Origin: Paragordius varius
Lineage: Eukaryota > Animalia > Nematomorpha
DNA: 64,000 nucleotides
Reading direction: 5' to 3'
Assembly (NCBI GenBank): GCA_964247055.1
Contig: OZ176053.1
Location: forward strand, 11,966,001-12,030,000
Position 1 is the first letter of the stretch; each line of letters begins with the position of its first letter. Of this stretch, positions 20,005 to 49,491 are shown piece after piece. Under the pieces are notes generated by a model. It was not told where the DNA came from. It searched no databases and was given only the letters and a program-made list of their open reading frames with translations. The position numbers and the translations under genes were made by a program.

Positions 20005-20295
20005 ATGAAATCATCGCAATTTATCATATTCCTACTTTTATTTTCACATATATGTTTGTTACCCTTTGTACAAGGCCTCTGGCCATTGGAATCCTTTAAA
20101 CAGGCCATTTCCAAAACCTTTCAGCAATTACTGGGACCTAGCAAAATCATTTCGTCTTCGGGGCCAAACAAAGCACCAGGTTTGAAATTTTATTTTTTGA
20201 TCAATTAAGACACATTTAGGTATCTGATCTGATAATTTAAATTTGTTTACCTATGTGGAAATACATATTTGTTTCCCTATTTATACATATATATA

Positions 20296-20333
<38 letters not shown>

Positions 20334-23300
20334 ATTCATCTACTTTAGATAGGTTACAGTTAAACAAGTTACATTGTCGTGATGCCGAAGGACCGGAAAA
20401 CGAGAAATTATCTGTCCATATAAAACAACTCAACCATATATTCAATTCGCAAAAGGGTGTAACGATCCGAATCTATCTTACACCTCACTTAGCCAATGAC
20501 AGCAGTTCAAACTCAGTACCTTACAAGGGTTCTTTGTTTGAATATCAGGTTTCTGCCATCCAAAAACAACGATTGATTTATGATTCGTTGAGTGGAACCT
20601 TTGTCGACATAGATGGAAACACTAAGGAGGGAACATCTCAAATACCAGTATTTGGTTTGGAATTCGTGGAAAACGAGGATAAAACATCTAAAAATCAAAT
20701 ACTTAAAATGTATTTTACTTTCCATAACAATGATGGCAACGATCCCTCAACCGAATTCAATGACACCTCGGGGCAGAATGAGGAGGAATCACTGTATAAC
20801 AAACACCCATTCACAACTGAAATCATGTATATGACATTACCTAGGTAACGAAATTTTTATTACAATATTTTTGAAATTGGATGTTATAATTGCTTACGTA
20901 GTCCTACAAACAGTTGTCGGGAATTTAACGCATAAATATTTTTTATTAATACATTTTAATAAATAATAAAGTTTATAAATGGCTTATTTTATCACTATAA
21001 ATATTTTAATTATAAAGGATTCCACATAATTTTTAACAAAGCAATATTTTTGGCATTTTTATTAGAAATAACTTGTCAAAATTCTTTTTCAACCATTTAT
21101 CCAAATGTTTAATAATCTACTTAGAAACAATATAAAATTTTTCGATAGATTTGAAATTATTATTATTAATAAAACTGGGCTTGTATTCAGAGAACCTTAG
21201 CGACATTTTTATATGAAATAACATCAATATAAAGTGAAAATATTAACTCCTTCCCAAAGTGCTTTAGAGAGTACAGTCAGAAACTATCATGAAATTTTTT
21301 ATTTTCATAGTTTTTTATTAAAATAGGATTATATACCAATCAATAGTAACCGTTTATAATTAAAATTTAACCATTGAAATATAACCCATTTGAAAGACCA
21401 AAAAATTTACAGAAAAATTGAGATTATACGGACAAAACTTTAAGACTGACAATATTGTTTCAAAAAAAGACTATATTTTGAATTTTTAGTATCTAAATAA
21501 CTCTTGGATTAAAAATATCAGGGCTTGGAACCCGAGCATAAATTTGGAACTGGTTTCAAAACAGTTCTAAAAATTTTAACTGGTTCCGGTTCTTTACATT
21601 TTTTCTGTTCACTAGAACCGGTTACTTAAAAAGTGGAACCTGTTCTAAAAAGGTTCTTAAAATTTCAAAACTTTTTTGGATCCGGTTCTCTCATTATTTT
21701 TCGGTTATTGAACCGGTTGTATATAGAATAGAACCGGTTCTTAAACTGGTTCGATCATATATTAAAATATCTGTAATTATTCCAAAAATATACATATGTA
21801 AGCACCTAATTTAATTAGAAAATATAATCAAAAACATATTTGCTCTAATCTTAGATCATCATTGTCAAAAAGAGTCTAAATCATAATTTAAAATTGAATA
21901 AAAATATGTGAGATACGATTATTGAACCTTTGTAGATACACTAATAAGTAAATATATAAATACTTAATATACACTTATCCAATTATTTTAAAGTTGCACA
22001 TGATCTTTCTACACTCACCTATTGGTAGGTAATATTATACTTGTGATGCTGGTATTCCCATAGTTATTTTGACTACAATTCGCGATTTTTAAACTTTAAA
22101 TCTTTCCGCACAAAAATTTGTGGAGTTGGTTACAAATGCAGTTTTACCAAAATCAATTATTATATCCTTGATGACTTTGTTATTGTCTAAGTGTTTATTT
22201 TTTATCAATAAATAAAATTCATAATTATTGCCCACTTCTATTGTTATGACTTACTTTTCGAAGTAATACATCTATGAAAAGCCAATAAGTTATTTCTTGC
22301 AGTGCATTTTTCTTCGTATGAAAGTTCGTCTTTAAAACGAGAATCCAAATACACAGAAAAGTATTTAATTTTTAAGATTTTGATGCACTCACTCTATTAG
22401 GCAAATATTCCATTATACAACTATTATTCAACTGATCTAAATCAAACAATAACCTCTTCCAGATATCAAATTATCTGAAAGGGTAATTTAATCGATGTAT
22501 TTTAAATACTCAGTTAAAGTGTAACAAAACTTAAAGCTTTGCCATAAAAAGTGTAAAAACTTGGACCCTAATATGAAACTGGTTCTAAAAAGGAAATTTT
22601 AACTGGCTCTGGTGTTCAATTAATTTTTTTCGGCCAAAACCGGTTTTAAAAAAATTGGAACATGTTTAAAACGGTTTTTAACACTGTTTCAGTTCTAATT
22701 CGCATTGTGGAACAACGATTCTGGTTCCAAGCCCTGAAAATATTAAAATATATTTAAATCATCCAAATTGTAATTAAATTTTAAATAAGTATGGTTGCCT
22801 TTTCTATATTTGTTTTTTAGTTTTTACATTTTGTCATATTAGTCAAATTTAACTGTAAGCTTCTATTAAATTATATAGATGGCTAATTTGTTATGAATGA
22901 CTATTTTATATAAAAACAATAAAATTAACACTGTATAAAAAAATTAAATGCTTGATGTTCGCAAGATAGAAAATCTTTAACCGGTTTTTTTTATCCCACA
23001 AAAAATAAAATTAATATCATTTCAACATTAATATTAACTATTAAAGAGTGAACGTTTCGGAGACTACTAATGTGATGTCTCTCGTCAGCGAAATTTTTAT
23101 TATAATACAAATTCAGAAAACAATATTCTACTTCAAGAAAACAAAAATGATTACTTAAGTCTAGCTTCAAAAGTTTAATAAAAATAAATTTAAATAATAC
23201 CAATACTATTAGAATATTTGAATGGTCTAAATAACATTAAAAATATATATAGGGATTGGGTTTGGGAGGTGTAATTTATTTTGAAATCACGACATGTGTA

Positions 23301-26300
23301 AATATGCAAAATTTATCCACAAATATTGTTAAAATTGGTTAAAACCAGTTTTCGTACCATCTAAATATATTTGAAATGGCAAACATTCGACTGACATTGC
23401 TAGTAATGATTTCGTTCCTTAATAATTAAAATGATTATTTTTATAGGTCAAAAACCTATACCAATTATAAAATTGTTTATAATTTTTATCTTAACACTCC
23501 GTGACCTTTTAGGGTAGTTTTATATCCCAGAGCGATTTGAAATATAAGTGTATTAAAAACTACTTAAGACATTAAGCCAAATTTTAAATATGCTTTCTTT
23601 AGCCTTTAAGGTACATTAAACAAAAAAACCTTTTTAATGTAAAATTGTAAAAAAACCCTCATATCAAACCGCCATTTTTTTATAATTTTTTGAAATCCCT
23701 AATGCAACAGACAAATAAATTATGGTTAGTAAATGTAATAATTAACTTTTACAAGCTTTCTATATTTTATCAGCAAAAACCTGATATATTTTGATTTTAA
23801 TATCTTGTGTTCGTTTCAAATGTTTTTGAGCTGTCCCATTATTAAGAAGTCACAAAACTGTAAAAAATTTAAGCTTTTGATTTAATACATGAGAACAATG
23901 TTTGATTATCAAATTTTAATTAAATAACTATCAAAACTGTAGTTTATTTATAAAATTGAACTCTAGAATATAAAACTACCCCAATTAGGACAAAAATGAA
24001 AAGGTAATGAATTGCTAATATCTAAAAATAAACGCTCAAATATTTATATTTCATATATTTATCATGATAGCAATTTGTTTAAGAAACCCAAAAATTTCCC
24101 TGTTATACAAACGCCAGAACCATATTTCAAAAATTCTGTTTTCTGCCACTCTTCCTCTGCCATTGCCGAAAAAGACACCGAAGAAATATCTGATACGAAA
24201 GCAACAAGACGCCTACATCATTTTATGGATGAAATCAAAGTTAACGTATATTGGATGAGGGATGCGAATAAAGCAAATTCATTACATGTTACAAGTTATG
24301 TGAATTGTGCATTTGCTGATGAGTTGGAATTTGTTCCGGTTGATATGGAGGTTGTTGATTTACGAAATAATAACGATCTTACTAAACAACAACTCACAAA
24401 CAATAACATTAGTAAAGTATCAACTGAATCTCCGTTTTGGGTTAACTTTGGACTTAATGATTCACGCATTTACGTTGGTCAAAAAAATCTTCAAATATAT
24501 GACGTATCTGGGAAAGCCGAAAATATCACGCAATATTTCAATGTATAATCTTATTTTTTACCATGTCTCTAAATTTTTAAAAGGTAAAATTACATATAAT
24601 TTATTAAATAAAATGCATTATCTCATCTAATAAAGGGAATAATACAAAATTTGTGGATTGGGCCATACGACAAAGTTTTGGATGAACAATGTGATAATAC
24701 GACCTCCAATGATTTGTTAAACATGCACAATCGAGTTAAAAGAGTATATTTAATTATTTCTTTAATAAACTCTGATATATACTATTTATTAACAAAAGGG
24801 TTCATTTGATTTCTTAACCTAATCGTATTTAATTTATTTGCATCTTGAAATTAAAACTTTAGACAATTTTTCCTGAAAGTCAAGTTCATATCGGTTAAGT
24901 TAACCCATTTTCCTAGCATTTGCTTTGTGAGGCGTTTCATTCATTTTTTAATTTAAATTTGGTGCTATTTTAAAAAATTATGGTTGGCCAAGAATTTATT
25001 ATTATATTTAATATTTTTACAGCAAGAAACAACTAGCACTTCTACTACGGACATAACCACAACCACAGAATTCGAAACAACTGAATCTGGTATATTTTTA
25101 CTCTTAACTATAAAAATCTGTATAGTATATCAGCATATTGGCGGGCTTTCAAAACGCCATCGTTAATCATTTTATTTTTTGCGTCTATATTAAAATGTAA
25201 TATGGATTTGTTTATAGTATGCCATTTTACACTTCATGTTTGACTGTATAATTATATTGAAACTTCTTTATATAGTTATTTTTGAATTAGGTAATATATT
25301 AATTTTGCCAATTTAATTACAATAATAATATTAATAATAAAAACTTTATTTTAAAGAACATTCGTTAAATGCCAAATCCGCTCCACCCATGATATCCGTT
25401 GAATCTGCCTTAATCGGATGTATAATTTGTCTTTTGTACTAATGAACTTGTCTATTTTGTTTTAACACAATTGATATATTATAATATATATAAATATATA
25501 TAAATTATTTTGAATGATATATAGACTAAAATAGAGTTAATTTTTAAGTTTTGCATAAGGTTGGGTTTTGACCCGTTCAAAAATAATCGGTCTGACTTGC
25601 AAATGCATTCAATTACGGTTTTAACCAGAAATGATATAATAACAAAAAATGAAATTAGTCATTCATCTCATGAGTTTAATACTGATATTTAATATAATTA
25701 ATACCCATACGTTTAAAAATATGTTATTTATAACTCTGAACATATGTTCAAAAAATTTTATCTGCTTTTTATAAGTACTGACACGGCCAATGATACATTT
25801 TATAGGTTAAAACTACCCTAATTAGCATCAAAATTTTAAAGGATTTACGATAGTTTTTGGAATTAAATAAGTGTCAGTTTAGTTTATTTGATGAGAATTT
25901 TTAGGATCTTAATAATTCTATGTTGAAAAAAAGTTATAATATTTTTACTAATTTATAGATTCGACGTATTCTACTTTAGAGGGTGAAACAACACCATCGA
26001 AAAAGACAAAGAAAACCAAAAAAACTACGCCCACAACCAAATCGACTTCTCCGGGTATACTATTATAATTGTTTTATACATAAAAATTATCCTTTATAGA
26101 GTATTGATTTCATTTATTCTTGAGAGTATTATTATAAATAGGGAAAAATTAATATAATTATGAATTAGGGTAAATTTAAATTGATGCCTAATAAGCGGGT
26201 GTTCTTATATATATTGTAAATTTTATGATGCGTCGTAACCTGAACTTTAAATTTTGAATGATTAATATTTTTACAATGTTAGTTAATTAATATATAAATT

Positions 26301-29300
26301 AAACCAGTTTTAGTCCAACTTTAATATTTTACTTTTTATTTGTAGGTGAAACTACACCTACTACAAAGTCAACCTCGCCAGGAGAAACAACACCAACTAC
26401 AAAATCTACTTCTCCAGGTATGCAACATAAAATATTTTATAATCCATAAAACATAAATTTAGAATTAAAATGGAGAATTAATTAAGTTTTTATGAGATTC
26501 ATGCGGAATTATCTCAGTAAATAAAAGTTGAGCTATTTTTACAAATAACACAGAGTGCTTAATTTTAGTGTCAAAATTGAATGAATTATGATAGGTACTA
26601 ACATTAGGTATCCAATGGTATTTAAAATTATAAGATGATAAAAATTTTAAAAAATTAAAAAATTTGTTTTAAAATCCAATAATAAAGGTGAAACAACGCC
26701 AACCACAAAATCTACCTCTCCAGGTGAGACAACACCGACTACAAAATCAACCTCGCCAGGTTTTTAAATAAAAATTAATAATTTTTCAAATTTTTTAATT
26801 TAATCGATTGTAGGTTATTGAGTAAAATATATTTATTTAAAGCATCGCTCTAATGTATTTATTATAATTTGTAATAAAGGAGAAACCACACCAACAACTG
26901 AACCGAAAGAAACCCAACCAACATCAAAATCTACTTCACCAGGTTTATTTTAGCACTTTTTTTTTAAATTTCATATAAAACATTATCAATCAATTTTGTA
27001 AATTATATTTAATTTAATATTCCGTATTAAAGGTGAAACAACTGGAACGACAAAATCAACTTCTCCTGATGAAACTACGCCTACGACTAAATCAACCTCT
27101 CCAGGTGTTTTGATATAATTTTTAATAAAATTTTCTTAGTGATATACAAGCAAACCTTTTTTGTGTAAACTTTATTTGTGAGAGGATGCTAATTTAAAAA
27201 TAATATATTCCGATAACACTGTCATATCAGTCAGTTTTTTTATAGTGTAAATATGAGAATCAGCTTTGTTTTTTTCTGAAAAAAATGTTTTTTGGCTTCA
27301 AGCCCAAAACCCTAAACATACGAAAAATAATTACTATCGATACAGAAAATGTAAATGGGTCTAATTTTGATTTGCAAAACACATGATAATATCAACAATA
27401 AATCCGAACAATACTAAAATATATAATGATAAATGCGATTTCTTTCACAATTATAGCAATATAAATAAAAAATATGACATATCGATTTAATTCATATTTA
27501 TTTTGCAAATAATTAGCTTGTTGCATTTATATATTTCATTCGAGAAAGAAGATACCGCTTTTTTGATTATTAATATACCAAATACTTTTTACTGTTTTTC
27601 CTAATTTTATTTATATTACTATCGATTTCGTACATCCTATATTGTTTGTAGAAGATAACTATTAAATGTACCTAATAATTTCCATCTTCTATATTTCTTC
27701 ATTAAACTATTCAAAATTGCATTGTTAATAGTTTTACATAGTTAAAAAAACCATAAATTTAACCAACGTTAAAATGTATGTGATATAAAAGTGTTATGAC
27801 GAATACAAATAAATTAAAAGCGAAATATATTTCGAAAAATATTACAAATCTAGGTGAAACTACTCCGACAACAAAATCAACTTCTCCGGGAGAAACAACG
27901 GAAACGACAAAATCTACATCACCAGGTAATTTTAGAAGAGTTTATAGACATGTTGCATTTATACTATATGAATTTAAAAAATATATAGTACTTTTTTTAT
28001 TTTAATATTAAAACATGCTAACAAATTGATTTTACGTAAATTTAGGATTGGAATAATCTATTGGAATATTTGATAAATTAAGTTCTACTATAAATTTCAC
28101 ATTGAAATACAAAATTCGACTTTAATCAATTAATTATTTAGGCGAAACAACTCCAACAACTAAATCAACGTCTCCGGGTGAAACTACCCCAACGACAAAG
28201 TCCACATCTCCAGGTACGTTTTGAGGGCGAATTATATAAATATTTTAGCCTGATAACTTTTTAAAATTGGATTACAATTTATATCACAAATGCGCTAAAG
28301 TCTAAAAGAGAATAATCATAATTTGGTAAAAATAAACCATTATGAGAAATATCGCGTTTTATGCTGAAATCTTTCATTATATTGATAAAAGATTTGTGTA
28401 ATTCATAATTTAAGGGCCCAAGTAGCTAAAAAAAGTACATTGAATGTGGTAAATGGTTTAGATATATTGGTCTCTATAAAATTGTACCAAAAAACATCAT
28501 TCAAAAAATGTGGAATTCAATTATTTCCTTATTCTCGTTTTGATTTGTTATAAAATTATTATTATTTGCAGGCGAAACGACCCCAACAACGAAATCAACC
28601 TCTCCAGGTGAAACAACCACGCCTAATGAAAATGATACCACACCGACTACAAAATCTACCTCACCAGGTTTATCAAACGATTTGAAATTATCTTTTATTT
28701 TTTAAACTTTTATTAATTGGTAAATACCATTTACAATTCAAATCACTTCTGATATATGTTTGCCCTCGAAAATTTTATATTCCCCCTTAAATACTTTAAA
28801 TTTACCCTAAAAATTAATATATTATATAACCTGTATTTTTGATTTTAAAATAATGAAAAACTTTGTTTTAGAGTAACATAATCCAGAAAAAAGATAAACT
28901 ATGCCATAAAAAATGTGTCATTCATTAATAAGTAAGATTATGCCAAAAATATATAATTTATTTTGAGAGCGAATTTAAAATAAAAATGATTTTAGATGTT
29001 CAAGGGTGAATTTGGGTATAAATGGAATATCTAACTTAATTTACTAGATGTTTTAATTTAATCTGTTTTTAATATTTACGATTTTATTTATTCCAATTTA
29101 GGCGAAACAACACCAACTACTAAAACAACCTCCCCAGGTATTATGAATATATTTTAATCGTGTGTTTCTTTAAACCATTTAACGTTGAGTTTGCCAGATT
29201 TACAATTTTTTATAAAAAATGGTTAAAGCGTGTGGCCCTAAATAATACATCCCCGATTTAATATCTTAGCTGTACAATTTTTAGATAGTCACATTGTTTG

Positions 29301-32300
29301 GGACGAGTAATACACTAATTGAATTCCATGCCCTTTAATAAAAAATCTAAACTCTAGGCTTTTTACATAATTATATAATTACTTCTTCGTAAAACTTTAG
29401 GAATGTTTTGATTTAATCATAACAAAATTTTTATGAAATTCCACTTTATAATTATTTTCAATGTATATCATCAATAGGTGAAACCACTCCCACTACTAAA
29501 TCAACATCACCTGGTGAAACAACACCTACGACTGAGTCAACTTCACCAGGTTTACGAAAAATAAATTCTAAAATTTTATTTAATGTTTAATATATTATTA
29601 TAATTATATAAATTTAATTTTAGGGGAAACAACTCCTACGACTAAGTCTACTTCTCCAGGTATACCTTTTTTTCATATACCTTTAAAAAGTTTTTTTGCA
29701 ATTTAAATATTATATTTACAACATATTTGGCGTTTTTTGCATGCGTTTGTCAATAATTGCCATTTTAATTTATTTATTTTAATAAATCTATATTTAACAA
29801 TTAGGAGAAACAACGGAAACCACCAAATCCACTTCGCCAGGAGAAACGAATCCTACGACAAAATCCACTTCCCCAGGTAAAAAAATGTGTTCTATTCAAT
29901 AAAACCAACTTTTTTCCGTTTAAAAGCAATATTTTTGGGGGGTAATTAATTCGTTAGTAAAAATTTCAAAAACAAGACCGTTTATTTAACACAACATTAT
30001 TTATATTAAAAAGCAACCAAACTCATATTTGTCCCAAAACGACATTTTTCCATTTATTTACTTAACACTATCTCATTGAAAAATTTATTATGCCAATAAT
30101 TTATTTAAATACAATTGGGAACTTATAGTTACATTAGTTTCAAAAAAATTTGAATTTTGAAAATCAATTGTGTTTATGAAGAGTAATGTTAATTGAATAT
30201 AATTTTTTTGAAAATACCTGTAATATAATTATTACCATGTGTTAACCCACACATCATCATTTTTTCTACATTTATATTATCTTAATAAACTATGAATACA
30301 AATTTATACAAATAATAAAATTCCATAATTAATTCCAATTATATATTTAAATTTTTTAACACCTTTAATCCGATTTGTTAAAAAATTAATATTTTTTTCC
30401 AATAAAAGGTGAAACCACAACAGAACCATCATCAAAGAAAAAACCGGATCAGGCTCCTCAAGATAAAGGAGAAGGAGATGATGAAGATACAACAGTAACT
30501 ACTAAATCAACTTCTCCAGGTAAATATTTAAGCAATTTAAGCTGTTTTAAATTTAACCAAATTTTATATATTTTTTACTAAATAATGTCACTTTAAATCT
30601 TTTATTAAGGAAAATTATATTAACCTATATATAATCTTTTTATTTTCTTTCCCAAAAAGTATGTTGGATTTATAAATTTTGCTAAGTTACCATAATATAT
30701 GCATAATTTTTTAATTAACAGGTGAAACTACCCCAACTACAAAAACTACATCACCCGGGGAAACAACACCTACGACCAAATCTACCTCACCGGGTTAAAA
30801 AGCTATTTTAGTTATTTAGATCTTAAATTTATACATTGTTAAAAAGAACTTAAATATTCTTGGAATAAAAATTTGAAAGATATTAAAATAGCCATAGGTT
30901 ATATTTATTTTTAAATAGAGTGAGCCAGATGGCGTGTGATTTAATAAGTTAAGCGCCGGACTTTACAGAGTGTATGGTACGATAGAGTTTTAACCCTGAT
31001 CAATTTTTTTATCATTACAGTCAGCCCAGAGCTTGCAGGTGTTAAAGCTCTCATATAAATACATAGAGACTATAAATTGTAATTATTAGTAAAAAATTTT
31101 AGCTAATTTTTTACTTTTAGGAGAAACTACTCCAACTACGAAAAGCACATCTCCCGGAGAAACAACACCTACGACTAAATCGACTTCACCAGGTTGATAA
31201 CTTTTACTTATTTAGCCCCAAAAGGCATTCAAAGGGCTCCCTTCTTTGAATTTTAAATTTATCATAGTTTTTGACATATATTACATATACATTACATTTT
31301 GTTTTTTTAAAGGTGAAACTACTCCAACAACAGAAACTACTTCACCAGGAGAAACAACTAAAACAACTTCTCCAGGTAATTTTCTTTATATTTAGCAATT
31401 GGATTGGCAATTGATTATATGGGGGCAGACTATTTAGCTTAAATTAGTTGTAAAATCAAAATGTGGTTCCAGATACTTTTGTAACCATATAAAAACGCAG
31501 ACCGATTCCGAAAATACATTTATTCTTTAATTTAATTTAAGTTAAATTAAAAAATATTTAAATTCTCGAGCAAAAAAAGAATACTAAATATTGTAATTTA
31601 TTTGTTGGCTTTCTTTAAATTTATAAATAAATACCGAAATAACAGAACCCACAAAATAGAAATACTTAAGCGTAAACCATTTATATATCATATTTTTAAA
31701 GAAAAACTTTTCCGAAATCGATTTTACCAAAATTTAAATTTTTAGGTGAAACCACTGAAACAACAAAATCTACTTCCCCGGGCGAAACAACTCCAACTAC
31801 AAAATCAACATCACCAGGTATAACACCAGTTTTTTAATTTCATAGAAAATTTTATGAAAGTAATCAATATCTAAACACTTTTTATTAATATTATCAAATA
31901 TAATTTACTCAAAAAATTTTAGGAGAAACTACACCAACCACAAAATCAACCTCGCCAGGTAAATAATTTGCCTAGTTTAACTATTTAGTAATAGGTTTTC
32001 TAGTACACTAAAAAATGATATTATACGGACAAAACTTGAATATATAAAGACAAATATTTTTTTTCAAAAAGACAACTATACTTTTTTAATCTTGATTTTT
32101 TGTAATACAACTCATTGTTTATTAAACTACAATATATAACATAGAAAGTCAATTGAATTAATTGTATATTTTACGATTGTAGTTAAATCTTTTTTATAGG
32201 ATAAATTAAGTTTTAACAAAGTATGGTTGTCTTTGGAAAAATAAATTTTGTCTTGTTATTTTTACATTTTGTCCGTATTCAATTTTTACGGTAAAACAAC

Positions 32301-35300
32301 AAATTTGATAAAAGCATTATCATAGTATTTCATCATTCGGCAATCTAAAACCATTTACAGTTCAAATTCACCCTTTAACAATTCAAATTCACCCTCGAAC
32401 AATTCAAATTCACCCTTGAACAATTCAAATTCACCTTTGAACAATTCAAATTCACCCTAATTAATATAAAATATATGTTTGTTATAGTTTTTATTTTTTC
32501 AGTATTATTTTAATTTAAAACAAAATTTTTATTTTTTAAAATATATAAAAATATTGGTAATTTTTAATCATAAAAAACATATATTTTATTTGAGGGTGAA
32601 TTTGAATGGGTCAATTTGAATTGTTTAAGGGTGAATTTGAATTGTTTAAGGGTGAATTTGAATTATTCAAGGGTGAATTTGAATTGTTTAAGGGTGAAAT
32701 TGAATTGTAAATGGTATATTTATATAATAAAATTTAGGAGAAACGACACCGACAACTAAAACTACTTCTCCGGGCGAAACAACTCCCACTACAAAATCCA
32801 CATCTCCTGGTATTTAATTATTTTTGTAGCTAATTTTAAGACACAATCAGAAACACCAAAAAATTCATATGAATGGGAATGGATATTTTTACATTTTCAT
32901 GCAAATTAATTAAAGGGAAAAATTATATAAAATTATTTTTTATTTCATAGGAGAAACTACACCAACGACTAAATCGACATCTCCAGGTGAAACAACCAGC
33001 CCTACAACAAAATCAACTTCACCAGGTAATTTTTTTTGAAAAAATATATACTATTGGAAAAAGCAAAGACTAAAATTTGTCCAAAACTAACTTTAATATA
33101 AAATCTTTTTTCATATTTTTAAATTGTTTATAGGGGAAACTACGTCACCTATGGAATCAACTTCGCCAGGAGAAACAACTCCCACGACGAAATCAACTTC
33201 TCCGGGTATGCATTCACTATATATCAAAACAGTAAAAATTAAAATTATACAGGCTGAACGGAAAACATGAAAAAATATATTTTCAAAAAACTTATAATAT
33301 ATAATTATCATTAAATATATAATTAAGTGTGTTACCACATCTCATATACTTATGTTGCATTTTAAACAATGAGTTAGTTACCTTTAAAATAATAAGGTTT
33401 AAAATGTACAGCGGTATTTTGAAAAATATTTGTCTTAATGTTGATACGTTTTATTTGTATAATAATATTAATTTTTACTGTTATTTGTTAAAAATATTGA
33501 ATAAAATAATAATTATTATTAAATGGCAAAATATTATTAACCTAGAGATTTTCAACAATCTATTATATACCATTTACAGTTCAATTCACTCTTAAATAAT
33601 TCAAATTCATCCTTGAACAATTCAAATTCACCCTAAAAATATATTATGTGTTTTCGAACTAAAATAACTTACGGCATAGTTAATTATTTTTTTAGTTTTA
33701 TTAATCTATAGAAATATAGGTAATTTATAATCTAAAAAATATTTTAAAGGTGAATTTGAATTGTTTGAGGGTGAATTTGAATTGTTCAAGGGTGAATTGA
33801 ATTGTTTAAGGGTGAGTTTGAATAAGTGGTATATTATAAATAATGATTGTGTAAATAATAAAGGTGAAGCAACTGAGCCGACGACCCCAAAATTAACTTC
33901 TCCGGGCGAAACAACCCCCACAACCAAATCAACCTCACCAGGTAAATTCCGTCCCTATATAATACAGTAAACATTGAGTACGGACAAAACGTAAAAATAT
34001 ATAGACATATATTTTTTCCTAAAAGACAACCATACTTTTTTAGATCTAAATTTTTCTCATATAAATAAGAATTTTACAATTATAAAATATATATTTGATT
34101 TTGTTACCAGAATACATCTCTATTTACTCCTTTGCAATTTCGAGCAATATTTATTCGAAAAATCGACATTGAAAAAATATGCTTGTCTTTTAAAAAATAT
34201 TTGTCTTTATATTTAGGCCTTGTCCGTATAGTTTCAATTTTTACTGTATAAATTATTAAATATATATTGGATTAAAAAAAATTAAACGCGATCGAACATA
34301 GATGTTTGAAGCGAATATAGGCTACAGATATTTATCCTTGCATCTTTAATCATAGCAATACTATAAAAATTCAATAAAATGGCCTTATTATAAATATGTT
34401 TGAACAGAGTTGTTTTACGAAAAAATCTAAATTTTGAGAAAATAACCTGCCAAACATAAATTTAAATCAAATTTATATCATGTTTTAAACTCTATGGCAT
34501 CATTTAATACATTTAATATGAATTGTTTTTAATTTAAAAAAATAGGCGAAACAACTCCAACTACAAAATCCACGTCCCCAGGAGAGACTACACTAACTAC
34601 GAAATCTACTTCTCCAGGTTTTTGATATATATTTTTTGTCAATTTTTTATTACAAATTCAATTTAAACTTTATTTGAAAGCTGCCCATAAAATTAAATCT
34701 AAATATATACCATTTACAAATCAAATTCACCCTTAAACAATTCAAAATCATCTAAACAATTTAAATTCACCCTTAAACAATTCAAAATCACCCTTGAACA
34801 ATTTAAATTCACCCTAAAAATAAATTATGTGTTTTGGGGTTAAATATAAATTATCATTAATATGAAATATTTTACGACATAGTTTATTTTTTTCAGCTAT
34901 TAAATTTAAACAGAATTTCCTATTTTAAAAATATTAAAAAATAAAGGTAATCTTTAATGTAGAAAAACACATAGTTTATTTTAAGATGAATTTGAAATTC
35001 AAGGGTAAATTTGAATTGTTTAAGGGTGAATTTGAATTGTTTAAGGGTGTATCGAATTGTGAATGGTATATATAAATTAAAGTTTTTGTTTAATTTTAAA
35101 AAAATAGGCGAAACAACTCCAACCACAAAATCAACGTCCCCAGGAGAGACTACGCCAACTACAAAATCCACTTCTCCAGGTTTTTAATATACATTTGATT
35201 TGTGTTAATATTAAATTTAGACTTTAATTTAATAGCTGCCCAAAAAAATTAAATCTAAATATATATTATTTACAATTCAAATTCACCCTTAAACAATTAA

Positions 35301-38300
35301 AATTCACCCTTGAACAATTTAAATTCACCCTAAAAATAAACATGTGTTTTCGGCATAATATAAAACATCATTAATATGAAATATACTTTTACGACATAGT
35401 ATTTTATTTTTCCAGCATTATATTAATTTTAAACAGAATTTCATATTTTAAAAATATTAAAAAATAAAGGTAATTTATAATGTAGAAAAACACATAGTTT
35501 GTTTTAGGGTGAATTTGAAATGTTTGAGGGTAAATTTGAATTGTTTAATTGTGGATTTGAATTGTAAATGGTAAATAATGGTAAATTTATCAACTATTTA
35601 GGAGAAACAACCCCTACAACTCAAAGTACTTCACCTGGTCAAACCACTAAACCAACAAGTATATATTCAATAAATATAAAAAAGTTATAATTATTAGAAA
35701 CTCCAAACATATTTATCTCTAAAATAATCTTATTTAGCTAAGCCTGGTGAAAGCGCTAAACCCGCACAAACTGGACCGAAAAAAGTTTATTAATAATTTG
35801 TTAAAAAATATTTTTTAATATTTTATAGGATTGTTGTAAACCCGTTACACTCAAGATTGGACAAAAAGTATATATATATATACATAATTTCATTTATAAA
35901 TTATAAAAAATATAAAAGATTTAAAAATTTTATATTATTTTTTATAAGGGTGACAGAGGAGAACCTGGTCAACCTGGTAAACCTGGGGAAAAGGGACCTC
36001 AGGTATATTACTCAGAGTTTTATGTATATTAATTCAATATTTTAATGTATATCAAAAAATATTCTGGTATCACAATCTATCATGATAATATTTACAGTAA
36101 AAATTTAAATTATAAATGCCCAACCTAAAAAGTAAAGAAGTTTATTTTTTCGAGCCATATCTTTATACCCTATTTTGCAAACCCAAACGAGTTTTTTTTA
36201 AATTATCAGGCTTATCCTTTTACTGTTTTGTCGTTATGATTTTAATTTTTACTGCAATGTTTAGAATTTTATAAAAAAAAATTAGTCTGGCAAGGTTTTA
36301 TATTATTCGTAAAATTATTAAATTTTAGGGACCACCTGGAGGACGTGGAGAAACAGGCGCACCCGGAAACGTTCGGTTTTTGGACCATTTGGGCCGAATA
36401 GCGGAAATGCAACCCGTAATTAATAGAAAATTTTTTTAGAACAAATTTTTTAGTTGTAAATCATAACTAGCTAACAGAATTGATTTAATCTAAATTTTTA
36501 CGGTTCTACCGTATTATTCTATACTTTTGGGTTATTTTGTACATTTAAATAAAAAAATTTATATATAATTGGAAATCCTACTCAAAACTACGTCTATTAT
36601 TTTGAAAAATTAGCTTTTAATGCGTAAATTTACAAAAATTGGCTCATATTCGAATTAAACGATTCTGTAATTAAACTTTAGTTTAGAAAAAATTTAATAA
36701 TAAGTCAATCATTTTCTGGTTTATTGTCATCCATTCTTTAAGACTTTTTCACTATGAAAAACATCGATATAATAGCCATTTATATATCTATATATATAGG
36801 GGCAAAAAGGTCAAAAAGGTGAGCCCGGTGACGTGTCTGTCATCCAAGTAAAAGGCGAAAGAGGCGATGCAGGCCGTCCAGGAACCCGCGGACCCCGTGG
36901 AAAACCTGGAATCAGAGGTCCTAGAGGACCACCTGGTCCTTATGGAGAGATTGGCATGCCTGGATATCCGGTAGTGTAAAATTTAAATTATGAATTCTTC
37001 TTTTTTTGCAATAAAGTTTTGGGATGAGTTTTAATAAGTTAATTTGTAATAATGGGAAGTTAACTTGATATTACTCAGCAGAGAATACTATAAAGCTTTA
37101 GAGAATTGGAATACGCAGAAATAGGTCATAGATGATATTTATACTATCGTATCTTAAAATACATATCTCTATCGTTGAAAATTCTGCGTTGCAAATTTAT
37201 TTAGAATTTGTTGTTCCGCTTCGAGGTCTGTAAATTGGGTTTTTGCTAGTTTTATTTATATTTGTGCAACTTGTTTTAAAGCAAAATAAACGGAAATTAG
37301 ATAAATTTTTAATTATTTATTTAGGGACCAACGGGCCCTGCAGGACCCCCCGGACCTCCTGGAAGAGGGGTGAGAGGTGAAAAAGGAAGTGTTGGCCCAC
37401 CCGGACCTCCTGGTCCAACTTCTGTCATCAATGCCGTAATTAATTTTTTTATTGACAAATTTATAAATTTATTTACAATAAAAAGTCCTTACAAATGAGA
37501 GATTTTGTAATTTATTTTCAGCCATACCAAGATAAAGGAGAATATATATTTATTAAACAAATATTTCACATTGAAATTTTTTTTTGAAATTATATACAAC
37601 AAGATTTTTTATTAGAGAGGACAACCGTTAACAATTGTACCAGGTCCTCCCGGTCCTATGGGTCCTGAAGGACCTAACGGACCCCCTGGTCCCAAAGGAC
37701 AAGCCGGCCAGCCAGGTTATTTTTAACAAAAATATTTTTATATATAAATTATGGTAATCATAATTGGCAATTTATTGACATAAAGAGTCCTTTAAATATT
37801 ATACCATTTCCCAGTCTAAATAAACGTTTTCCCAGTCAATCGAAACATTTTCCCAGTCAATCGAAACGTTTTCCCAATCAATCGAAACATATTCCCAATC
37901 AATAAAAACATTTTCCCAATCAATAAAAACGTTTTTCCAGTCAATAAAAACGGTTTTATTTTTGATGATAAATATCAAAACAGGAATATAAACAACTTTT
38001 ATCCATTATTAGCGTAATACAATGGAGATAATTTTTAATTAAAATCACAATTATTAATTTATTCTAGTGTACAATCTTAATGACTTATTCTTTAAATGTT
38101 ATATTTTTGGAATTTGAGTTAAAATAATATTTTTTATTTTATCGATGGTTCGAATTAATATTTTAACTTAAAAAATCTATTACGGAGGAATTAAATAAAC
38201 CAATTTTATCACAAACATTTAACACTTCATATTGGATTTTAAACATAAATTTTACCCTAATTTTATAATATTTAACATTTGGTTGGGGGCCTAAGGCGGC

Positions 38301-41300
38301 CTTCCGAATATCTGTGTGCGGCCTCAAAAAATTTGGAAATCCATATAAAATATGCCCACAAAATCTTTGTACATATTTCTTACGCAATTATGAATGAGTC
38401 TATTTCATTGGTAACGATTAAAAAAATTGTTACATTGTGTTTGTATTTTACAGTCTTATTAATCGAAAAATTATGTGAATGCCCGTATTGGGGAACCGTG
38501 TGCTTTTTGAGTTAAAAATGCGGCCCGCGAAGGCATTCAGTTAGACACCCTTGTTTTAGTCAAATATCCTTTTTATTAAATATTTTTAAATCAAAAACAT
38601 TTTTATCAAAAAAAATTCATTTAGATATTTTTTCCGACAGTATTTTTATCAACAAACCTGACATATTTAAAAACTGTTGTGAAGCGTTCAGCAAATATTA
38701 ATGCTAACCATCGATAAAATAAAAAATCTCAAATTCCAAAAATATAACATTTAAAGAATAAGTCATTACTGGAATATATTGTCATTCAATAATTGTGTTT
38801 TTAATTAAATATCTCCATTGTATTGCGCTAATAATGGTTAAAAGTTGTTTATATTCCTGTTTTGATATTTATCATCAAAAATAAGACCGTTTTTATTGAC
38901 TGGGAAAATGTTTTTATTGATTGGGAATATGTTTCGATTGACTGGGAAAACGTTTCGATTGACTGGGAAAACGTTTCGATTGACTGGAAAAACGTTTCGA
39001 TTGACTGGAAAAACGTTTCGATTGACTGGGAAAACGTTTCGATTGACTGGGAAAACGTTTCGATTGATTGGGAAAATGTTTCGATTGACTGGGAAACGTT
39101 TATTTAGACTGGGAAATGGTATGTATATAAAAACTATTAAAACATTAACATAAATTTATTTATTTTTTTCAATAAAGAAAGTAAAAATATTGTTGTATTG
39201 TAGTATATATATATTTTGGATCATTTAAACTATTTTATAAAATATTTGTCAAATAAAAATATAAAATAGGTCCCATGGGTGATCGAGGAATCCAGGGATT
39301 TGTTGGAGCGCCCGGGATGAAAGGAGACCGCGGGCCGATTGGGCCCAAAGGTGATAAAGGTTTGCCTGGAGTGGAAGGGATCCCTGGACCACCTGGAAGA
39401 TCAGTAAATACGTTTTTTTTGGCAAAATAATTTTCTATTTTAAAAAGGTTGTTAATTCTTTTCCATCCAATGCTAAATAATATTTTAAACAAACGAATAT
39501 TTTGGAGAACAAAAATTTAATTGTCTTGTATTTTTAACCAAAATATATGCATTTCGATAAACGATGATATCTTTATCAATGAATAACAATAAAAAGACAA
39601 TATTAAGTTTTATTATTTCTTGTTAGTTTTATAATTTATTTATTTTTGTGTTAATTTAAAGTCATCAATAAATTTATAATTTTTTACTGATGTATTAAAT
39701 TATTTTGGTCTGACCAAAAGTTTAATTTACCATTTTTATTTTCCTATAATAAAAAAATAAAAGGGAGAACCGGGAAGACCTGGAACTCCTGGCGCGACTG
39801 GACCTGCCGGTCCTCCTGGAGCGGTCGGACCGCCAGGACCGCCTTCCTCACCTTTGGATCCAAGACAGTTACAACAGTTAAGAGGTCCGCCTGGACCACC
39901 GGTATTTTTTTTTCCATAAAAAAAATATTTTTTTTTCATTTCACGTTAATATGCATTTTTTTGGCCTTAACTACGAAGAACAACAATTTCATACATTATT
40001 CTATATTTTAATGATTCTATGATTTTTTAATTTTAAGCGAAATGAAATATTTATTTTATTTATCTTTTTTGATCATTAAGAAATAATTAACGCAGAATCG
40101 TGTTATTTTTAATTTAAATGATGTTCAATTGGTTTTAAAAAAATTAATTTTAACACAAAAACAATTTACATTTTACCAAAATGTAGTTCTTTAATATTTT
40201 GCTTGATATGCAATTAGGGTCCACCTGGACCGCCTGGGTCTCCAGCACCTATGCAACAACAAAGGCCAGGAAATCCATACCAACCAGTCTACAGTAAGTA
40301 TTTTTTTAACTTGAAATATATTAATTATTTTCTCTTGTAAATATACACTATATCGCAAAATATATCTATTTGCCGGTATAAAAAGCAGACAAAACGTTAC
40401 TAAAGACAATTTTTTTAATATAAAAATATAATTGTACTAACCCTAATTTCTCTTACATACACTATAATAGTACACTTTTAAAATATGTAATTGAGTGTGT
40501 GACCGCACCTCTATATTTTGCAACACAGCGATGATAAATATTGAACAAAACTAAGGTTTTTGGAAAAATATGGTTGCCTTTTGTATATAAATATTGTATT
40601 CTTCTGGTTTTTCCTGTATTATTTAAATTTTTATTGTGTTCATTGGTAAAGTGCAACAACAACAGGCAAGTCCGATGGCCGCATGTCCCCATGCGTGTCC
40701 AGCAGGACCGCCTGGTCCTCCAGGCCCACCTGGACAACCGCAACATACTTCTCAAACAGGTCCGGCTCAATCATCTCAAGGAATGACTAATAGTGGGGTA
40801 ACAGTGCTACGATCGCAAAGAGAGTTGGATAATTTGTATCCAAGGCTTAAAACTGGTACGTTATTTTGTCGAAATAGTTTAAAGCATAATAGATAAAATT
40901 GATTTTTTATTACTTGGTATGTTATAAGTTTTCTTGTGAGAAAACAAATTTGATGAAAGAGTTATCATGAATAATTAGGTATGATACTGTAAGAAAAGTT
41001 TATATAAATAATTTTTTTTAAAACTCAAACCATATATAAATTTAAATAGGTTCCCTAGTTTACATTCTTGAACAACCGAAAGAATCGTTGGTTATACGAA
41101 CGGATTGGGGTTGGAGAGAGATAGCACTTGGCCCACTTATTCCACCACCCTCGGCATCTGCTTACGATCCTCGAATAGCGATTCAATCTTCTCAACAGCA
41201 GCAAGCACAACAACATCGTGCCCAAGCCCAACAAATGCCTTCTCAGTCTCAAAGCGATGCACGTAGACCGCCGAATCCCATTAATACAGGGAATCAAGAT

Positions 41301-43880
41301 CCCCAACAACAAAGTAGATTGGAAATGGAGAGAAGGAGGTATTTGTAATTAAAAATACTTTTATGCATGATATTATTTATTTAAAAATATTCTGTTGATA
41401 CGGTTGAAATCCTATTGGTTTCAATTAGGATTAAGACAATGTTGACTTAATAAAATTAAGAAAGTTGCAAAGTATACGGGTACTAGATACTAGTATTTAC
41501 TAAATAGTTTGATCAAAAATAAAGGGAATTGATCTAAATAAAAATTGGATATTTGTGGAATAAACATAAAAGTTATCGCTAGTAGTCTTTTATAATCTTA
41601 AAAATTGATACATCTAACCTCAAAGTTTTAAGAATATATACCATTTACAATTCAAATTTCCGCTTAAACAATTCAAATTTCCCCTTAAACAATTCAAATT
41701 CATCCTTGAACAATTCAATTTCACCCTTGAACAATTCAAATTCACCCTTGAACAATTCAAATTCACCCTCGAACAATTCAAATTCACCCTCAAATAAAAT
41801 ATATGTTTTTAAGATTAAAAATTACCTATATTTTATATATTTTTTAAAAATAATTATTTTGTTCTAAAGTAAAATAATACTAAAAAAATAATAAACTATA
41901 CCAGAAACATATATTTCATATTAATAATCAGCTATATTAGTTCGAAAACACATAATTTATTTTTAGGGTGAATTCGAATTGTTCAAAGGTGAATTTGAAT
42001 TGTTCAAGGGTGAATTTGAATTGTTCAAGGGTGAATTTGAATTGTTCAAGGGTATTAAATTGTTCAAAGGTGAATTTGAACTCTAAATGGTATATTTATG
42101 TATTTGATAAAGGCAACATCAGCAACAACAAGAAGAAATGCGTCGGCGTCAATCATTACCAGGATCAGCTGGGCGGCCGACCCAGGGACGAAATGAACAG
42201 CAAGATCCCCGTAGGCGACAAAGCATGCCTGCATTGAATATGCAAAATGTACCAATTAGTCCAAATATTAAACCCATTGGCGGAAATCGAATCGAACAAC
42301 AAAATCCCCCCAGACCTCTTCATCAACGTAAAGTGGGTGGTGTACACAGTTTAAGGGCTAACCCAGTCCCAATCCATTCAATGGTGTACGATGGGCATGG
42401 ACAACATCATAGGGGAACTCAACATAGGTTTGAAAAGTAAATTTCCCTACGTTTGAGCTTAATGCTAACATTTTAACCGATATTTTTCCTTTCAAATTCA
42501 TGGCTTTACATTTAAGTTCATGGTAAACTATAATAAATTTTTGAAGTTTATTCTAAATTTAAAGTATATTTTATTTAAAAAATAGGTATTTGATTAACCC
42601 CTACCATCATTCTTCTCAACATAAATTTCCGCACAACTTTTTACGGGATTATCGGTATTCCGTCGACAATAGACTTGTAAAGATGGAGGAAGAGAATGAC
42701 CCGAAAAAATCCAAGGTATAATATAAATCTATTATATATTGTTTCATATATATTTTTGATCTAACAATAACTGCATATCCTTGAATTCTTAAGCATTTAC
42801 AGTCAAAAATCAGCAGTTTGCATAGTAACGTGTACAAAAGCTATGATAAATATAAAAATTAAATCATTGTACATATAAAGGATATGGCTTAAAATAGTTT
42901 TTAATTTATGATAAAATTAAAATATTAAATATATGAGTACACATGGTTAACACATGTGTTTAACACATATCCAATATTTGACTGTTTTTAAAAGGGATTA
43001 CGGTCATGGTTATACATTTCTGAACTAAAACTCTAGTTTTACAAACGGACAATTATATATTAATTTTAATAAATGTGCACAGATACGTTTAGTTGCTTTA
43101 AATCGACCGTTTGAGGGCCGCATTTCTGGTGTTCTCGTCGCAAATCATTTATGCAACAAAGAAGGTCTTAAACTAAGTCCTAAAGGAACGTTTCGCGCTT
43201 TGCTTACGGACATTGGGAGAGATTTGAAGAATATTGTGCTAGATAGATATTGGAAGAGTTCTGTAGTCAATTTAAACGTAACCAATCAACAATATTTTAT
43301 TTTAAAAAAGATGCTGTACAAAATCTAATTCAATATTTACAAACAATATTCTTAAATAGGGGGAGGAACTGTTCGAAAGTTGGAAAGCCATGTTCGATAA
43401 CAGTCAATCTTGGCCGAATGAGTTTAAATTATTTTCTTTTGATGGGAAAAACGTTTTGGAAGAAGAACATATTTGGTAAGTAGCTTATAACACGGTGCTC
43501 AGCACAAATAAATGTTAATGAATAATATATCATTCGATAGATAAAAATTTCAGGATAATGAATATCGAAATGAGATATGCGATAATTATTTAAAAAAATG
43601 ATTTAAATATTTCTGTTATTAGCCAAAATCAAAACATCACATTTTTATCACACATTAGGTCAAATAAAATTTAATAAAATGAATAAAAACGTGTCAACTA
43701 AATTTTATTTGTGTTAATGTAGAAGGATATTTTTAAAGGCAAAATATTATCAACAAAGATTCTTAAACTTTTTCGGATGGTCCCAGAAAAATTTATTAAA
43801 ATATAAGCTATTTAGCGTATTAATCGTAAAATATTATTAATGCGGTAAATGATTTTTGTTTTATTAGAAATATTATATTA

Positions 43881-43924
<44 letters not shown>

Positions 43925-48973: not shown

Positions 48974-49491
48974 CCAAAGGTCAGCATTGTTTTAGAATCT
49001 TATTAGAATATCATAATAATTTATTTTAATTTATTCAACCAAATTTTGGTTACCTAACTAAAAATTTAAATCCATATAATATATTGTATGGTGCGCCTAT
49101 TCATTTACACTTTAGAAAAAGATGATTTTGTACTGCTGGAAATTTTGGAAAGCCATTAATCCTTTTTCTACCTGTCCTTTGTAATTTTATTCGAAATTAA
49201 TTAAAAAAGTGTTGATAATTATTTAATACTACAGCAAACATTGTTTAAATAATTATTTTACAAATCATCTTTTCACTTGGTTAAAAAATTATGTTATATA
49301 ATTTCCTCCGTTTCCGTTAACCTTCTTTTTTGGCTGATAAGGTCTCAACAGTGTAACTGCTTCGCATTTTCACCGTTTTATTTCTAATAAATATTAAACA
49401 TTTCTAAAAATCGTAATACATTTCAAAAATCACATCATTTATCAATACCCTAAAACCTTAAATTTAAAATTCATTTTTTTGCAATAATAGG

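What the first reader, a model, noticed from the sequence alone, without database searches (positions are those of the whole stretch)
25959..35658. Multiplexin with a ~585-aa mucin-like stalk built from 25 symmetric mini-exons
Between the TSPN-like domain and the collagen region lie about 44 copies of [12 protein letters not shown], encoded one or two units per exon (mostly 36 or 72 nt). Every exon is phase 1-1 and a multiple of 3 nt, so any subset can be skipped without frameshift: a potential combinatorial length-tuning system for a basement-membrane collagen. Vertebrate collagens XV/XVIII carry Ser-Gly glycosaminoglycan sites in this region; I saw no acidic Ser-Gly site here, and a Thr/Ser/Pro array suggests dense O-glycosylation instead. 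I do not know of a described multiplexin with such an exon array, but could not search.
Basis: partly seen in the sequence, partly recalled or inferred. Interest (0 to 1): 0.8.

Follow-up and report, generated by a model that had tools for sequence, protein, structure and literature searches.

The report
Multiplexin collagen with mini-exon mucin stalk
The only basement-membrane "multiplexin" collagen gene of this AT-rich worm-like genome carries a 585-residue threonine-rich, probably sugar-coated spacer cut into 25 small frame-neutral exons; the exons are clearly real and under strong selection, but no RNA data could show whether they are ever skipped.

Summary
At 25959-35658 (+) lie 25 GT-AG exons (14 of 72 nt, 3 of 36, the rest 57-111). 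All are multiples of 3 and phase 1-1. They total 1755 nt = 585 aa (Thr 39.5%, Ser 15%, Pro 15%), with 22 exact and about 22 variant [12 protein letters not shown] units and no Ser-Gly.

The exons are coding. Identical units differ at saturated synonymous sites, dN/dS is about 0.04, and a 32-exon model from the start codon to the first collagen exon is stop-free.

The gene is the genome's only endostatin-bearing locus. It also has collagen repeats and the multiplexin trimerization domain. "TSPN-like" for the N-terminal domain is only weakly supported.

Best reading: an old, selected mucin-type spacer replacing the glycosaminoglycan-bearing linker of vertebrate collagens XV/XVIII.

Exon-skipping "length tuning" is permitted by the structure but untested, because every run that held the locus was DNA.

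None of 127 annotated multiplexins has such a region. One unidentified invertebrate's multiplexin locus has a Thr-rich repeat there, in one large exon.

Multi-exon mucin domains, and the splicing idea, were published for chicken Muc13. Earlier notes of this scan report similar mini-exon mucin genes on other DNA of this genome.

Verdict: new variant of a known kind, moderate interest.

The parts
20005..20179 (+). Exon 1: start codon and hydrophobic signal-peptide-like N-terminus; ends in phase 1
   Evidence: Read directly (Met, Lys, then a run of Phe/Ile/Leu, then Val-Gln-Gly). GT donor. No signal-peptide predictor was run.
20349..20844 (+). Exon 2: first half of the N-terminal globular domain (165 codons, phase 1 to 2)
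   Evidence: Long open frame in DNA where 7.1% of trinucleotides are stops; P(no stop) about 5e-6. Weak hhalign match to the TSPN strand motif. No Pfam or PDB hit.
24071..24542 (+). Exon 3: second half of the N-terminal domain (157 codons, phase 2 to 0)
   Evidence: Open frame with phase-matched AG/GT. hhalign E 0.0094 to the TSPN 'W-R-L-A ... N-C' motif. No other hit.
25023..25089 (+). Exon 4: Thr-rich lead-in (67 nt, phase 0 to 1) that sets the phase of the array
   Evidence: The polymorphism at 25034 is a third-position change.
25959..35658 (+). Array of 25 phase 1-1 mini-exons (1755 nt, 585 aa) encoding about 44 [12 protein letters not shown] units: the mucin-like stalk
   Evidence: anatomy. 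(saturated synonymous sites, dN/dS about 0.04). (exon identity 70-91%, flanks mostly unrelated). (unique to this locus).
35738..35784 (+). Linker exon (47 nt, phase 1 to 0), Lys/Pro/Ala-rich
35829..35867 (+). 13-codon exon with a Cys-Cys pair just before the triple helix (candidate inter-chain disulfide knot)
   Evidence: The function is inferred.
35949..40290 (+). Interrupted collagenous region in about 8 exons; the first is a 54-nt Gly-X-Y exon at 35949-36002
   Evidence: Pfam Collagen for 36800-36976 and 39257-39427. Gly-X-Y frames listed. Exact exon ends after 36002 were not determined.
40627..41345 (+). Multiplexin trimerization domain, followed by a Gln-rich stretch
   Evidence: PF20010 Collagen_trimer, 26.8 bits, above the cut-off. 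BLASTP to Drosophila multiplexins. Coordinates are open-frame limits.
43029..48128 (+). Endostatin domain in four exons, within the open frames 43029-43325, 43360-43476, 44866-45033 and 47922-48128 (stop after 48128)
   Evidence: PF06482. PDB endostatin. tblastn of ten multiplexin C-termini. Coordinates are open-frame limits.
32350..35577 (.). Four intronic hairpin elements made of 21-nt tandem repeats (32350-32715, 33576-33823, 34716-35060, 35260-35577). Arms 34998-35052 and 35272-35331 are complementary across exon 24.
   Evidence: Any effect on splicing is speculative.

Best explanation
This is the single multiplexin (collagen XV/XVIII-type) gene of an AT-rich animal genome, which earlier notes of this scan take for a relative of the horsehair worm Gordionus. 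Its order is: signal peptide, a divergent N-terminal globular domain, a 585-residue Thr/Ser/Pro spacer, a Cys-Cys knot, an interrupted triple helix, the trimerization domain, a hinge and endostatin. The spacer is encoded by 25 old mini-exons, each holding one to three 12-residue units and each split at the same place, inside the Gly codon. All of them are kept by purifying selection. Shown: the exon anatomy, the coding constraint and the gene identity. Inferred: the spacer is an unfolded, densely O-GalNAc-glycosylated 'bottle-brush' rod of roughly 150 nm (585 residues at about 0.25 nm each, from general knowledge of mucin domains). On this reading it holds the N-terminal domain away from the collagen rod and hydrates the matrix. 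It would play the part that glycosaminoglycan chains play in vertebrate collagens XV/XVIII. Most or all exons are normally included. Skipping is possible without frameshift but is not needed to explain the data.
For: Anatomy and phases. The 32 exons from the ATG to the first collagen exon are all GT-AG and give 1035 codons with no stop. Coding constraint: 22 units with an identical peptide have 41% third-position identity, against 43% expected from pooled codon use. The fourteen 72-nt exons give pS 0.65, pN 0.059 and dN/dS about 0.04. Age: mean exon identity is 77%, and intron flanks are unrelated except for one young pair, exons 23/24. Polymorphism: the four exonic differences listed for a second sample are all third-position. 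All 12 listed indels lie in introns. Gene identity. Composition: 69.5% Thr+Ser+Pro, almost no hydrophobic residues, no Cys. Enzymes: at least four loci pair a Glyco_transf_7C exon with a downstream Ricin-B lectin exon on the same strand, the layout of polypeptide GalNAc-transferases. Splice-linked codon choice: the exon-final Pro codon is CCA in 20 of 24 exons against 9 of 17 internal junctions, giving CAG|GT (Fisher p 0.045).
Against: No RNA or protein evidence: no RNA run held the locus. Glycosylation is inferred from composition only. The exact 12-mer is conserved more strictly than a mere glycan carrier would need, which hints at a sequence-specific role. The N-terminal domain could not be assigned. 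No orthologue from a close relative could be retrieved, so conservation between species is unknown.
Confidence: 0.78

Rival explanations
1. Length-tuning cassette system. Tissues or stages include different subsets of the 25 symmetric exons, so the stalk length varies in steps of 12 or 24 residues, as in the PEVK spring of titin.
For: All exons are phase 1-1 and multiples of 3. Many two-unit exons carry in-register internal CAG|G and G|GT sites. Donors are weak, with +5 G in only 3 of 25. Complementary intronic arms flank exon 24. The same proposal was made for chicken Muc13 (PMC1552070). Titin's PEVK region is a spring, and developmental exon skipping across titin exons 50-219 shortens the protein (abstracts of PMC7274174 and PMC3575840).
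Against: No RNA data at all. Every exon is under strong purifying selection, so none is a rarely used cassette.
Confidence: 0.2
2. A sequence-specific periodic module rather than a generic mucin. On this reading the fixed 12-mer, with Glu at position 2, Lys at 8 and Pro at 5 and 12, forms a polyproline-II-like, charge-periodic rod or entropic spring, or a repeated docking site. Glycans would be secondary.
For: The peptide is conserved exactly in 22 units although synonymous sites are randomised. In ordinary mucin repeats composition, not sequence, is what is kept (general knowledge). There is one acidic and one basic residue per unit, and three chains run in parallel in a collagen trimer (inference).
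Against: Thr+Ser make up 54% of residues, with Pro close to most of them, which is the usual context of GalNAc-transferase sites (general knowledge). Nothing here tests conformation or binding.
Confidence: 0.2
3. The array is not part of the multiplexin message: it is a separate gene, or a decaying relic.
For: No transcript evidence links the exons.
Against: The array has no start, stop or other domain of its own. The phases fit the flanking exons exactly, and the 32-exon join is stop-free. dN/dS is about 0.04. An unidentified invertebrate also has a Thr-rich repeat exon directly upstream of its first multiplexin collagen exon, on the same strand and in matching phase.
Confidence: 0.03

Closest known systems
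Vertebrate collagens XV and XVIII (multiplexins), including the O-glycosylated DUF959 domain of collagen XVIII
   Same: C-terminal trimerization domain plus endostatin and an interrupted triple helix. A heavily glycosylated non-collagenous N-terminal region: putative glycosaminoglycan sites lie mainly in the N-terminal part of collagen XV (PMC7852327). DUF959 of collagen XVIII is reported as disordered and highly O-glycosylated (Kaur et al. 2018, title seen in the reference list of PMC10216475).
   Different: There is no Ser-Gly site here. The glycan carrier is a 12-residue tandem repeat between the N-terminal domain and the helix. From my own knowledge, DUF959 lies N-terminal to TSPN. Here the carrier is split into 25 exons.
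Chicken Muc13 PTS domain encoded by multiple exons (Lang, Hansson and Samuelsson 2006, PMC1552070)
   Same: [quoted passage not shown]
   Different: Muc13 is a transmembrane mucin of a vertebrate. Here the array sits inside a basement-membrane collagen, holds one to three units per exon, and shows saturated synonymous divergence.
Titin PEVK region
   Same: A low-complexity extensible segment with Pro, Glu and Lys. The PEVK region is an entropic spring, and exon skipping across titin exons 50-219 shortens cardiac titin during development (abstracts of PMC7274174 and PMC3575840). That it is encoded by many small in-frame exons rests on my own knowledge.
   Different: Titin is an intracellular muscle protein without glycosylation. 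No splicing data exist for the present gene.
Schistosome micro-exon genes (MEGs)
   Same: Secreted proteins built from short exons (3-81 bp) regularly interspersed with long introns (PMC10526429).
   Different: MEGs are small, fast-evolving parasite secretions. Here the exons are repeats of one conserved unit within a large conserved matrix gene.
Multiplexin locus of an unidentified invertebrate (ENA metagenome assembly ERZ25066855, contig ctg1088; loci L024, L027, L028, L029)
   Same: On the same strand, a Thr/Ser-rich tandem repeat of about 26 units of 20 residues ends at a phase-0 donor. This lies 3.1 kb upstream of a first collagen exon that also begins Gly-Asp-Arg-Gly, and endostatin exons follow downstream.
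   Different: The repeat lies in one large open frame of about 3 kb, with one apparent frameshift, not in mini-exons. The unit differs and is less Thr/Ser/Pro-rich. GC is about 40%, so this is not a close relative. Whether that exon belongs to the multiplexin gene is not shown.

Membership tests
Multiplexin (collagen XV/XVIII type) | C-terminal endostatin domain (PF06482) | tested here: met
   Three exon pieces match PF06482 positions 2-65, 68-104 and 106-133. PDB endostatin hit, E 2.7e-4. The fourth exon, with the C-terminal Cys motif, was found by tblastn at about 47950-48128.
Multiplexin (collagen XV/XVIII type) | Trimerization domain (PF20010) between the helix and the hinge | tested here: met
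   26.8 bits against a cut-off of 23.8. BLASTP to Drosophila multiplexins, E 5e-7.
Multiplexin (collagen XV/XVIII type) | Interrupted collagen triple helix | tested here: met
   Pfam Collagen on two exons. Several Gly-X-Y frames separated by non-collagenous stretches.
Multiplexin (collagen XV/XVIII type) | N-terminal thrombospondin-N-like (TSPN/LamG) domain | tested here: inconclusive
   No Pfam, PDB or BLAST hit. hhalign against six multiplexin TSPN domains gives two weak, collinear motif matches (E 0.36 and 0.0094). Single-exon AlphaFold models have pLDDT 34 and 30. Known multiplexin TSPN domains themselves score below the Pfam cut-off.
Multiplexin (collagen XV/XVIII type) | Acidic Ser-Gly glycosaminoglycan sites in the N-terminal region (a vertebrate feature) | tested here: not met
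   No Ser-Gly in the 585-aa stalk. Chondroitin GalNAc-transferase-like genes are present in the genome, so the absence is not explained by their loss.
Mucin-type PTS domain | Long Pro/Thr/Ser-rich tandem-repeat region without a hydrophobic core | tested here: met
   69.5% Thr+Ser+Pro over 585 aa and about 44 units.
Mucin-type PTS domain | Entry into the secretory pathway | tested here: inconclusive
   The N-terminus looks like a signal peptide by eye. No predictor was available.
Mucin-type PTS domain | Dense O-GalNAc glycosylation | not testable with these tools
   Only indirect: at least four loci have the GalNAc-transferase-like domain order.
Cassette-exon repeat arrays (Muc13-type, PEVK-type, MEG-type) | Each exon encodes whole repeat units and all exons share one phase | tested here: met
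Cassette-exon repeat arrays (Muc13-type, PEVK-type, MEG-type) | Variable exon inclusion seen in transcripts | not testable with these tools
   No RNA run held the stretch.

The most novel reading that the evidence does not exclude
The 25 exons form a regulated cassette system. Tissues or life stages of the worm would include different numbers of them, helped by in-register internal splice sites and by complementary intronic hairpin arms that can loop out single exons. This would set the reach of a basement-membrane collagen in 12-residue steps, an extracellular counterpart of titin's PEVK spring.
Probability: 0.15. Interest if true: 0.7.

Novelty: new variant of a known kind. Interest (0 to 1): 0.4.

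Why it matters
Multiplexins link basement membranes to the surrounding matrix. In vertebrates they are collagen-proteoglycan hybrids. Here the same position holds a mucin-type repeat, which suggests that what evolution keeps is a hydrated, glycan-bearing spacer and not the type of glycan.

The array is also a clean case of selection on a low-complexity repeat. The peptide is fixed while synonymous sites are randomised, so the conservation cannot come from recent copying between units.

The gene gives a simple test of whether a multi-exon mucin domain is used to vary protein length, an idea put forward for chicken Muc13 in 2006. One PCR across 25 symmetric exons would answer it.

Tried and rejected
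RNA evidence:
- The one run search returned no RNA holder.
- The four runs laid on 25000-30999 were all DNA contigs covering the introns.
- Several joints there have sides of only 20-24 letters and fall in repeats, so I do not count them.

Orthologues:
- The full HMMER search with the first endostatin exon found nothing above 47 bits and no protein of this genome.
- The word search with N-terminal exon 3 found nothing.
- Two single-exon proteins of this genome are not in the collection, so the genome seems unannotated there.
- Logan contigs of the next-best hits have about 40% GC and are not close relatives.

N-terminal domain:
- Pfam, PDB, BLAST against 127 multiplexins and atlas features gave nothing.
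- Single-exon AlphaFold models were unusable, so no fold search was run on them.

Considered and rejected:
- The 36/72-nt exons are not derived collagen exons. Gly recurs only every 12th residue, and this gene's collagen exons are phase 0.
- The two long Glyco_transf_7C open frames are not GalNAc-transferases. They are chondroitin GalNAc-transferase-like.
- The ENA contig ctg1088 is not Gordionus. Its GC is about 40%, against 26.93% published for that genome.

- No joined (spliced) protein was given to any search or folding tool; every search was exon by exon, by reference.
- The join was made only inside local scripts, to check stops, phases and composition.
Full report
WHAT IS THERE. The window is very AT-rich, about 27% G+C. 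It lies on contig 4 of a 110.6-Mb assembly of 44 contigs. Fourteen are 72 nt, three are 36, two are 63 and two are 96. Single exons measure 111, 75, 78 and 57 nt.

Every exon follows an AG and precedes a GT, and every length is divisible by 3. Every intron falls after the first base of a Gly codon, with one exception. The last exon ends after the first base of a Thr codon.

The exons sum to 1755 nt, or 585 residues. Composition is Thr 39.5%, Ser 15.0%, Pro 15.0%, Glu 9.7%, Lys 8.7% and Gly 7.9%. There are 22 exact [12 protein letters not shown] units and about as many variants. There is no Ser-Gly, no Cys, and only a handful of hydrophobic residues. Introns are 74-779 nt, median 309.

Outside these exons and the lead-in exon 25023-25089, no Thr/Ser/Pro-rich 10-mer exists in any frame of either strand between 24600 and 36000. 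The peptide unit and an exon-shaped DNA pattern occur nowhere else in the genome.

The array is not an assembly artefact. Contigs from the probable source sample match without differences, and a second sample of the same species covers it with polymorphisms.

ARE THE EXONS CODING? Yes, on three independent grounds.

First, the 22 units with identical peptides are only 80% identical in DNA. Their third codon positions agree in 41% of comparisons, against 43% expected if codons were drawn at random from the pooled usage. Synonymous sites are therefore saturated while the peptide is fixed.

Second, for the fourteen 72-nt exons pS is 0.65 and pN is 0.059, which gives dN/dS of about 0.04. Recent copying between units cannot explain this, because it would also homogenise silent sites. 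Only exons 23 and 24 look like a young pair, at 91% identity with similar downstream flanks. Otherwise intron flanks are no more alike than shuffled sequence.

Third, the phases fit. A model of exon 1 (20005-20179), exon 2 (20349-20844), exon 3 (24071-24542), exon 4 (25023-25089), the 25 array exons, a linker exon (35738-35784), a Cys-Cys exon (35829-35867) and the first collagen exon (35949-36002) is all GT-AG. It reads through 1035 codons without a stop.

There is some weaker support as well. Four differences in exons were listed between the window and a second sample of the species, and all four are third-position changes. All 12 listed indels lie in introns. These are small numbers from a truncated table.

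The exon-final Pro codon is CCA in 20 of 24 exons, against 9 of 17 at unit junctions inside exons. CCA gives the CAG|GT splice context (Fisher p 0.045).

WHICH GENE? Downstream frames match Pfam Collagen, the multiplexin-specific trimerization domain PF20010 and Endostatin PF06482. They also match solved endostatin structures.

The last endostatin exon lies at about 47950-48128. It sits behind a 2.9-kb intron that holds a hAT-type transposase frame.

This is the only endostatin locus in the genome. That fits the published statement that invertebrates have one multiplexin (PMC7852327). Exon by exon, the C-terminal pieces align collinearly with beetle, fly, tardigrade and nematode multiplexins at 40-50% identity.

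THE N-TERMINAL DOMAIN. Exons 2 and 3 are long open frames, and the chance of no stop is about 5e-6 and 9e-6. They have no Pfam, PDB, BLAST or atlas match.

Against a profile of six multiplexin TSPN domains they give two weak matches in the right order. The first is to the strand pair around 'VQLGV ... NVTLYYTD' (E 0.36). The second is to 'W-R-L-A ... N-C' (E 0.0094).

Known TSPN domains also stay below Pfam's cut-off, so the negative results weigh little. Single-exon AlphaFold models were useless, with pLDDT 34 and 30. 'TSPN-like' therefore rests on position and on weak motifs.

IS THE ARRAY SPLICED IN VARYING WAYS? I could not test this. The one run search found no RNA holder. The runs with a quarter of the words turned out to be DNA of a polymorphic second sample and low-depth DNA in a run labelled as another organism. 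All of them cover the introns.

The structure permits skipping:
- one common phase for all exons;
- in-register internal CAG|G and G|GT sites inside many two-unit exons;
- donors with little beyond GT, with G at +5 in only 3 of 25;
- four intronic hairpin elements built from 21-nt repeats, two of whose arms are 90-95% complementary across exon 24.

Against a system in which exons are often left out, each exon is under the same strong constraint.

HOW IT MOST LIKELY WORKS. The composition is that of a mucin-type PTS domain, with Pro next to or near most Thr/Ser. At least four loci in the genome pair a Glyco_transf_7C exon with a downstream Ricin-B lectin exon on the same strand. That is the domain order of polypeptide GalNAc-transferases.

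I infer a disordered, densely O-glycosylated rod. At about 0.25 nm per residue (general knowledge of mucins) it would measure roughly 150 nm, which is longer than the triple helix of this protein. It sits where vertebrate collagen XV carries most of its putative glycosaminoglycan sites (PMC7852327).

Chondroitin GalNAc-transferase-like genes exist in the genome. The lack of Ser-Gly sites is therefore a property of this protein, not of the organism.

The strict conservation of the 12-mer, with one Glu and one Lys per unit, hints at something beyond carrying sugars. I list that as a rival explanation.

COMPARISON AND NOVELTY. A profile search found 1304 multiplexins, and I scanned the 127 sequences returned. 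These come from arthropods, nematodes, tardigrades, a priapulid, a nemertean, amphioxus, a tunicate, fishes and sharks. Only two have any 40-residue window with at least 60% Thr+Ser+Pro, and those windows are 43 and 52 residues long. The sample favours typical, high-scoring sequences of 0.55-1.75 times the query length.

Walking upstream from the best exon-level hit gave a more telling case. That hit lies on a 1.96-Mb contig of an ENA metagenome assembly, with about 40% G+C and endostatin about 50% identical to arthropods. There I found an open frame of about 3 kb on the same strand.
- It encodes about 26 copies of a 20-residue Thr-rich unit.
- It ends at a phase-0 AAG|GTAAGT donor.
- That donor is 3.1 kb before a first collagen exon beginning Gly-Asp-Arg-Gly, as here.

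If that exon belongs to the gene, a Thr-rich repeat spacer before the helix is not unique to this genome. There, however, it is one exon.

The multi-exon design has a published precedent. The PTS domain of chicken Muc13 is encoded by multiple exons, one repeat each, and the authors raised control of PTS length by alternative splicing (PMC1552070).

Earlier notes of this scan describe several other Thr-rich, phase-1 mini-exon mucin genes on other DNA of this same genome. They also name Gordionus as its closest relative found. I did not test those claims. Published hairworm genomes are 200-300 Mb and that of Gordionus is 26.93% G+C, so the species itself remains unnamed.

VERDICT. This is a new variant of known kinds: a multiplexin, a mucin-type spacer and a multi-exon repeat array. 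The isoform-tuning idea is open and easy to test.

LIMITS. Joins were made only in local scripts, for stop, phase and composition checks.

Noticed in passing
window 45700-47295 (+): A 532-codon open frame with a hAT dimerisation domain (PF05699) and a weak DUF4371 match lies inside the last intron of the multiplexin gene, on the same strand. It is a seemingly intact hAT-type transposase.
   Followed up: partly
window 32350-32715, 33576-33823, 34716-35060, 35260-35577; similar 21-nt repeats near 37800-39100 and 41950-42100: A family of hairpin elements whose two arms are tandem arrays of a 21-nt unit, 90-190 nt apart, accounts for most of the length of the longer introns. Arms of neighbouring copies are complementary across exon 24.
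   Followed up: partly
L028 3593-6564 (ENA ERZ25066855, contig ctg1088): An unidentified invertebrate's multiplexin locus has a Ser/Thr-rich exon of about 990 codons with about 26 copies of a 20-residue unit, directly upstream of its collagen exons. The frame shifts once near 5350-5630, which may be an assembly error in the repeat.
   Followed up: partly
window 28331 to 29574 (joint seen in runs X3 and X5): Contigs of a second sample join two intron positions and skip 1242 bases that hold array exons 8-10, although the same runs also cover the skipped part. The anchor is only 24 letters. It could be a repeat-graph artefact or an exon-number polymorphism.
   Followed up: no
window 30409-30519 and 25959-26054: Two array exons carry charged inserts that break the repeat. 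Exon 13 has a Lys-Lys-Lys cluster followed by an Asp/Glu cluster. Array exon 1 has a Lys-Lys-Thr-Lys-Lys-Thr-Lys-Lys run. These are possible hinge, cleavage or binding sites.
   Followed up: no
window 49468-50988 (+): A 507-codon open frame just downstream of the multiplexin gene has no Pfam match.
   Followed up: partly
G000 C1:3222622-3224229 and C2:1285749-1287473 (L025, L026): Two uninterrupted open frames of 536 and 575 codons match chondroitin N-acetylgalactosaminyltransferase (PF05679), so glycosaminoglycan synthesis genes are present. Neither exact protein is in the public protein collection.
   Followed up: partly
run X4 (organism B): A 2024 run labelled as a different organism holds low-depth contigs (2-8x) of this locus, most without any difference. 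This would fit a host or carry-over sample of a parasite.
   Followed up: no
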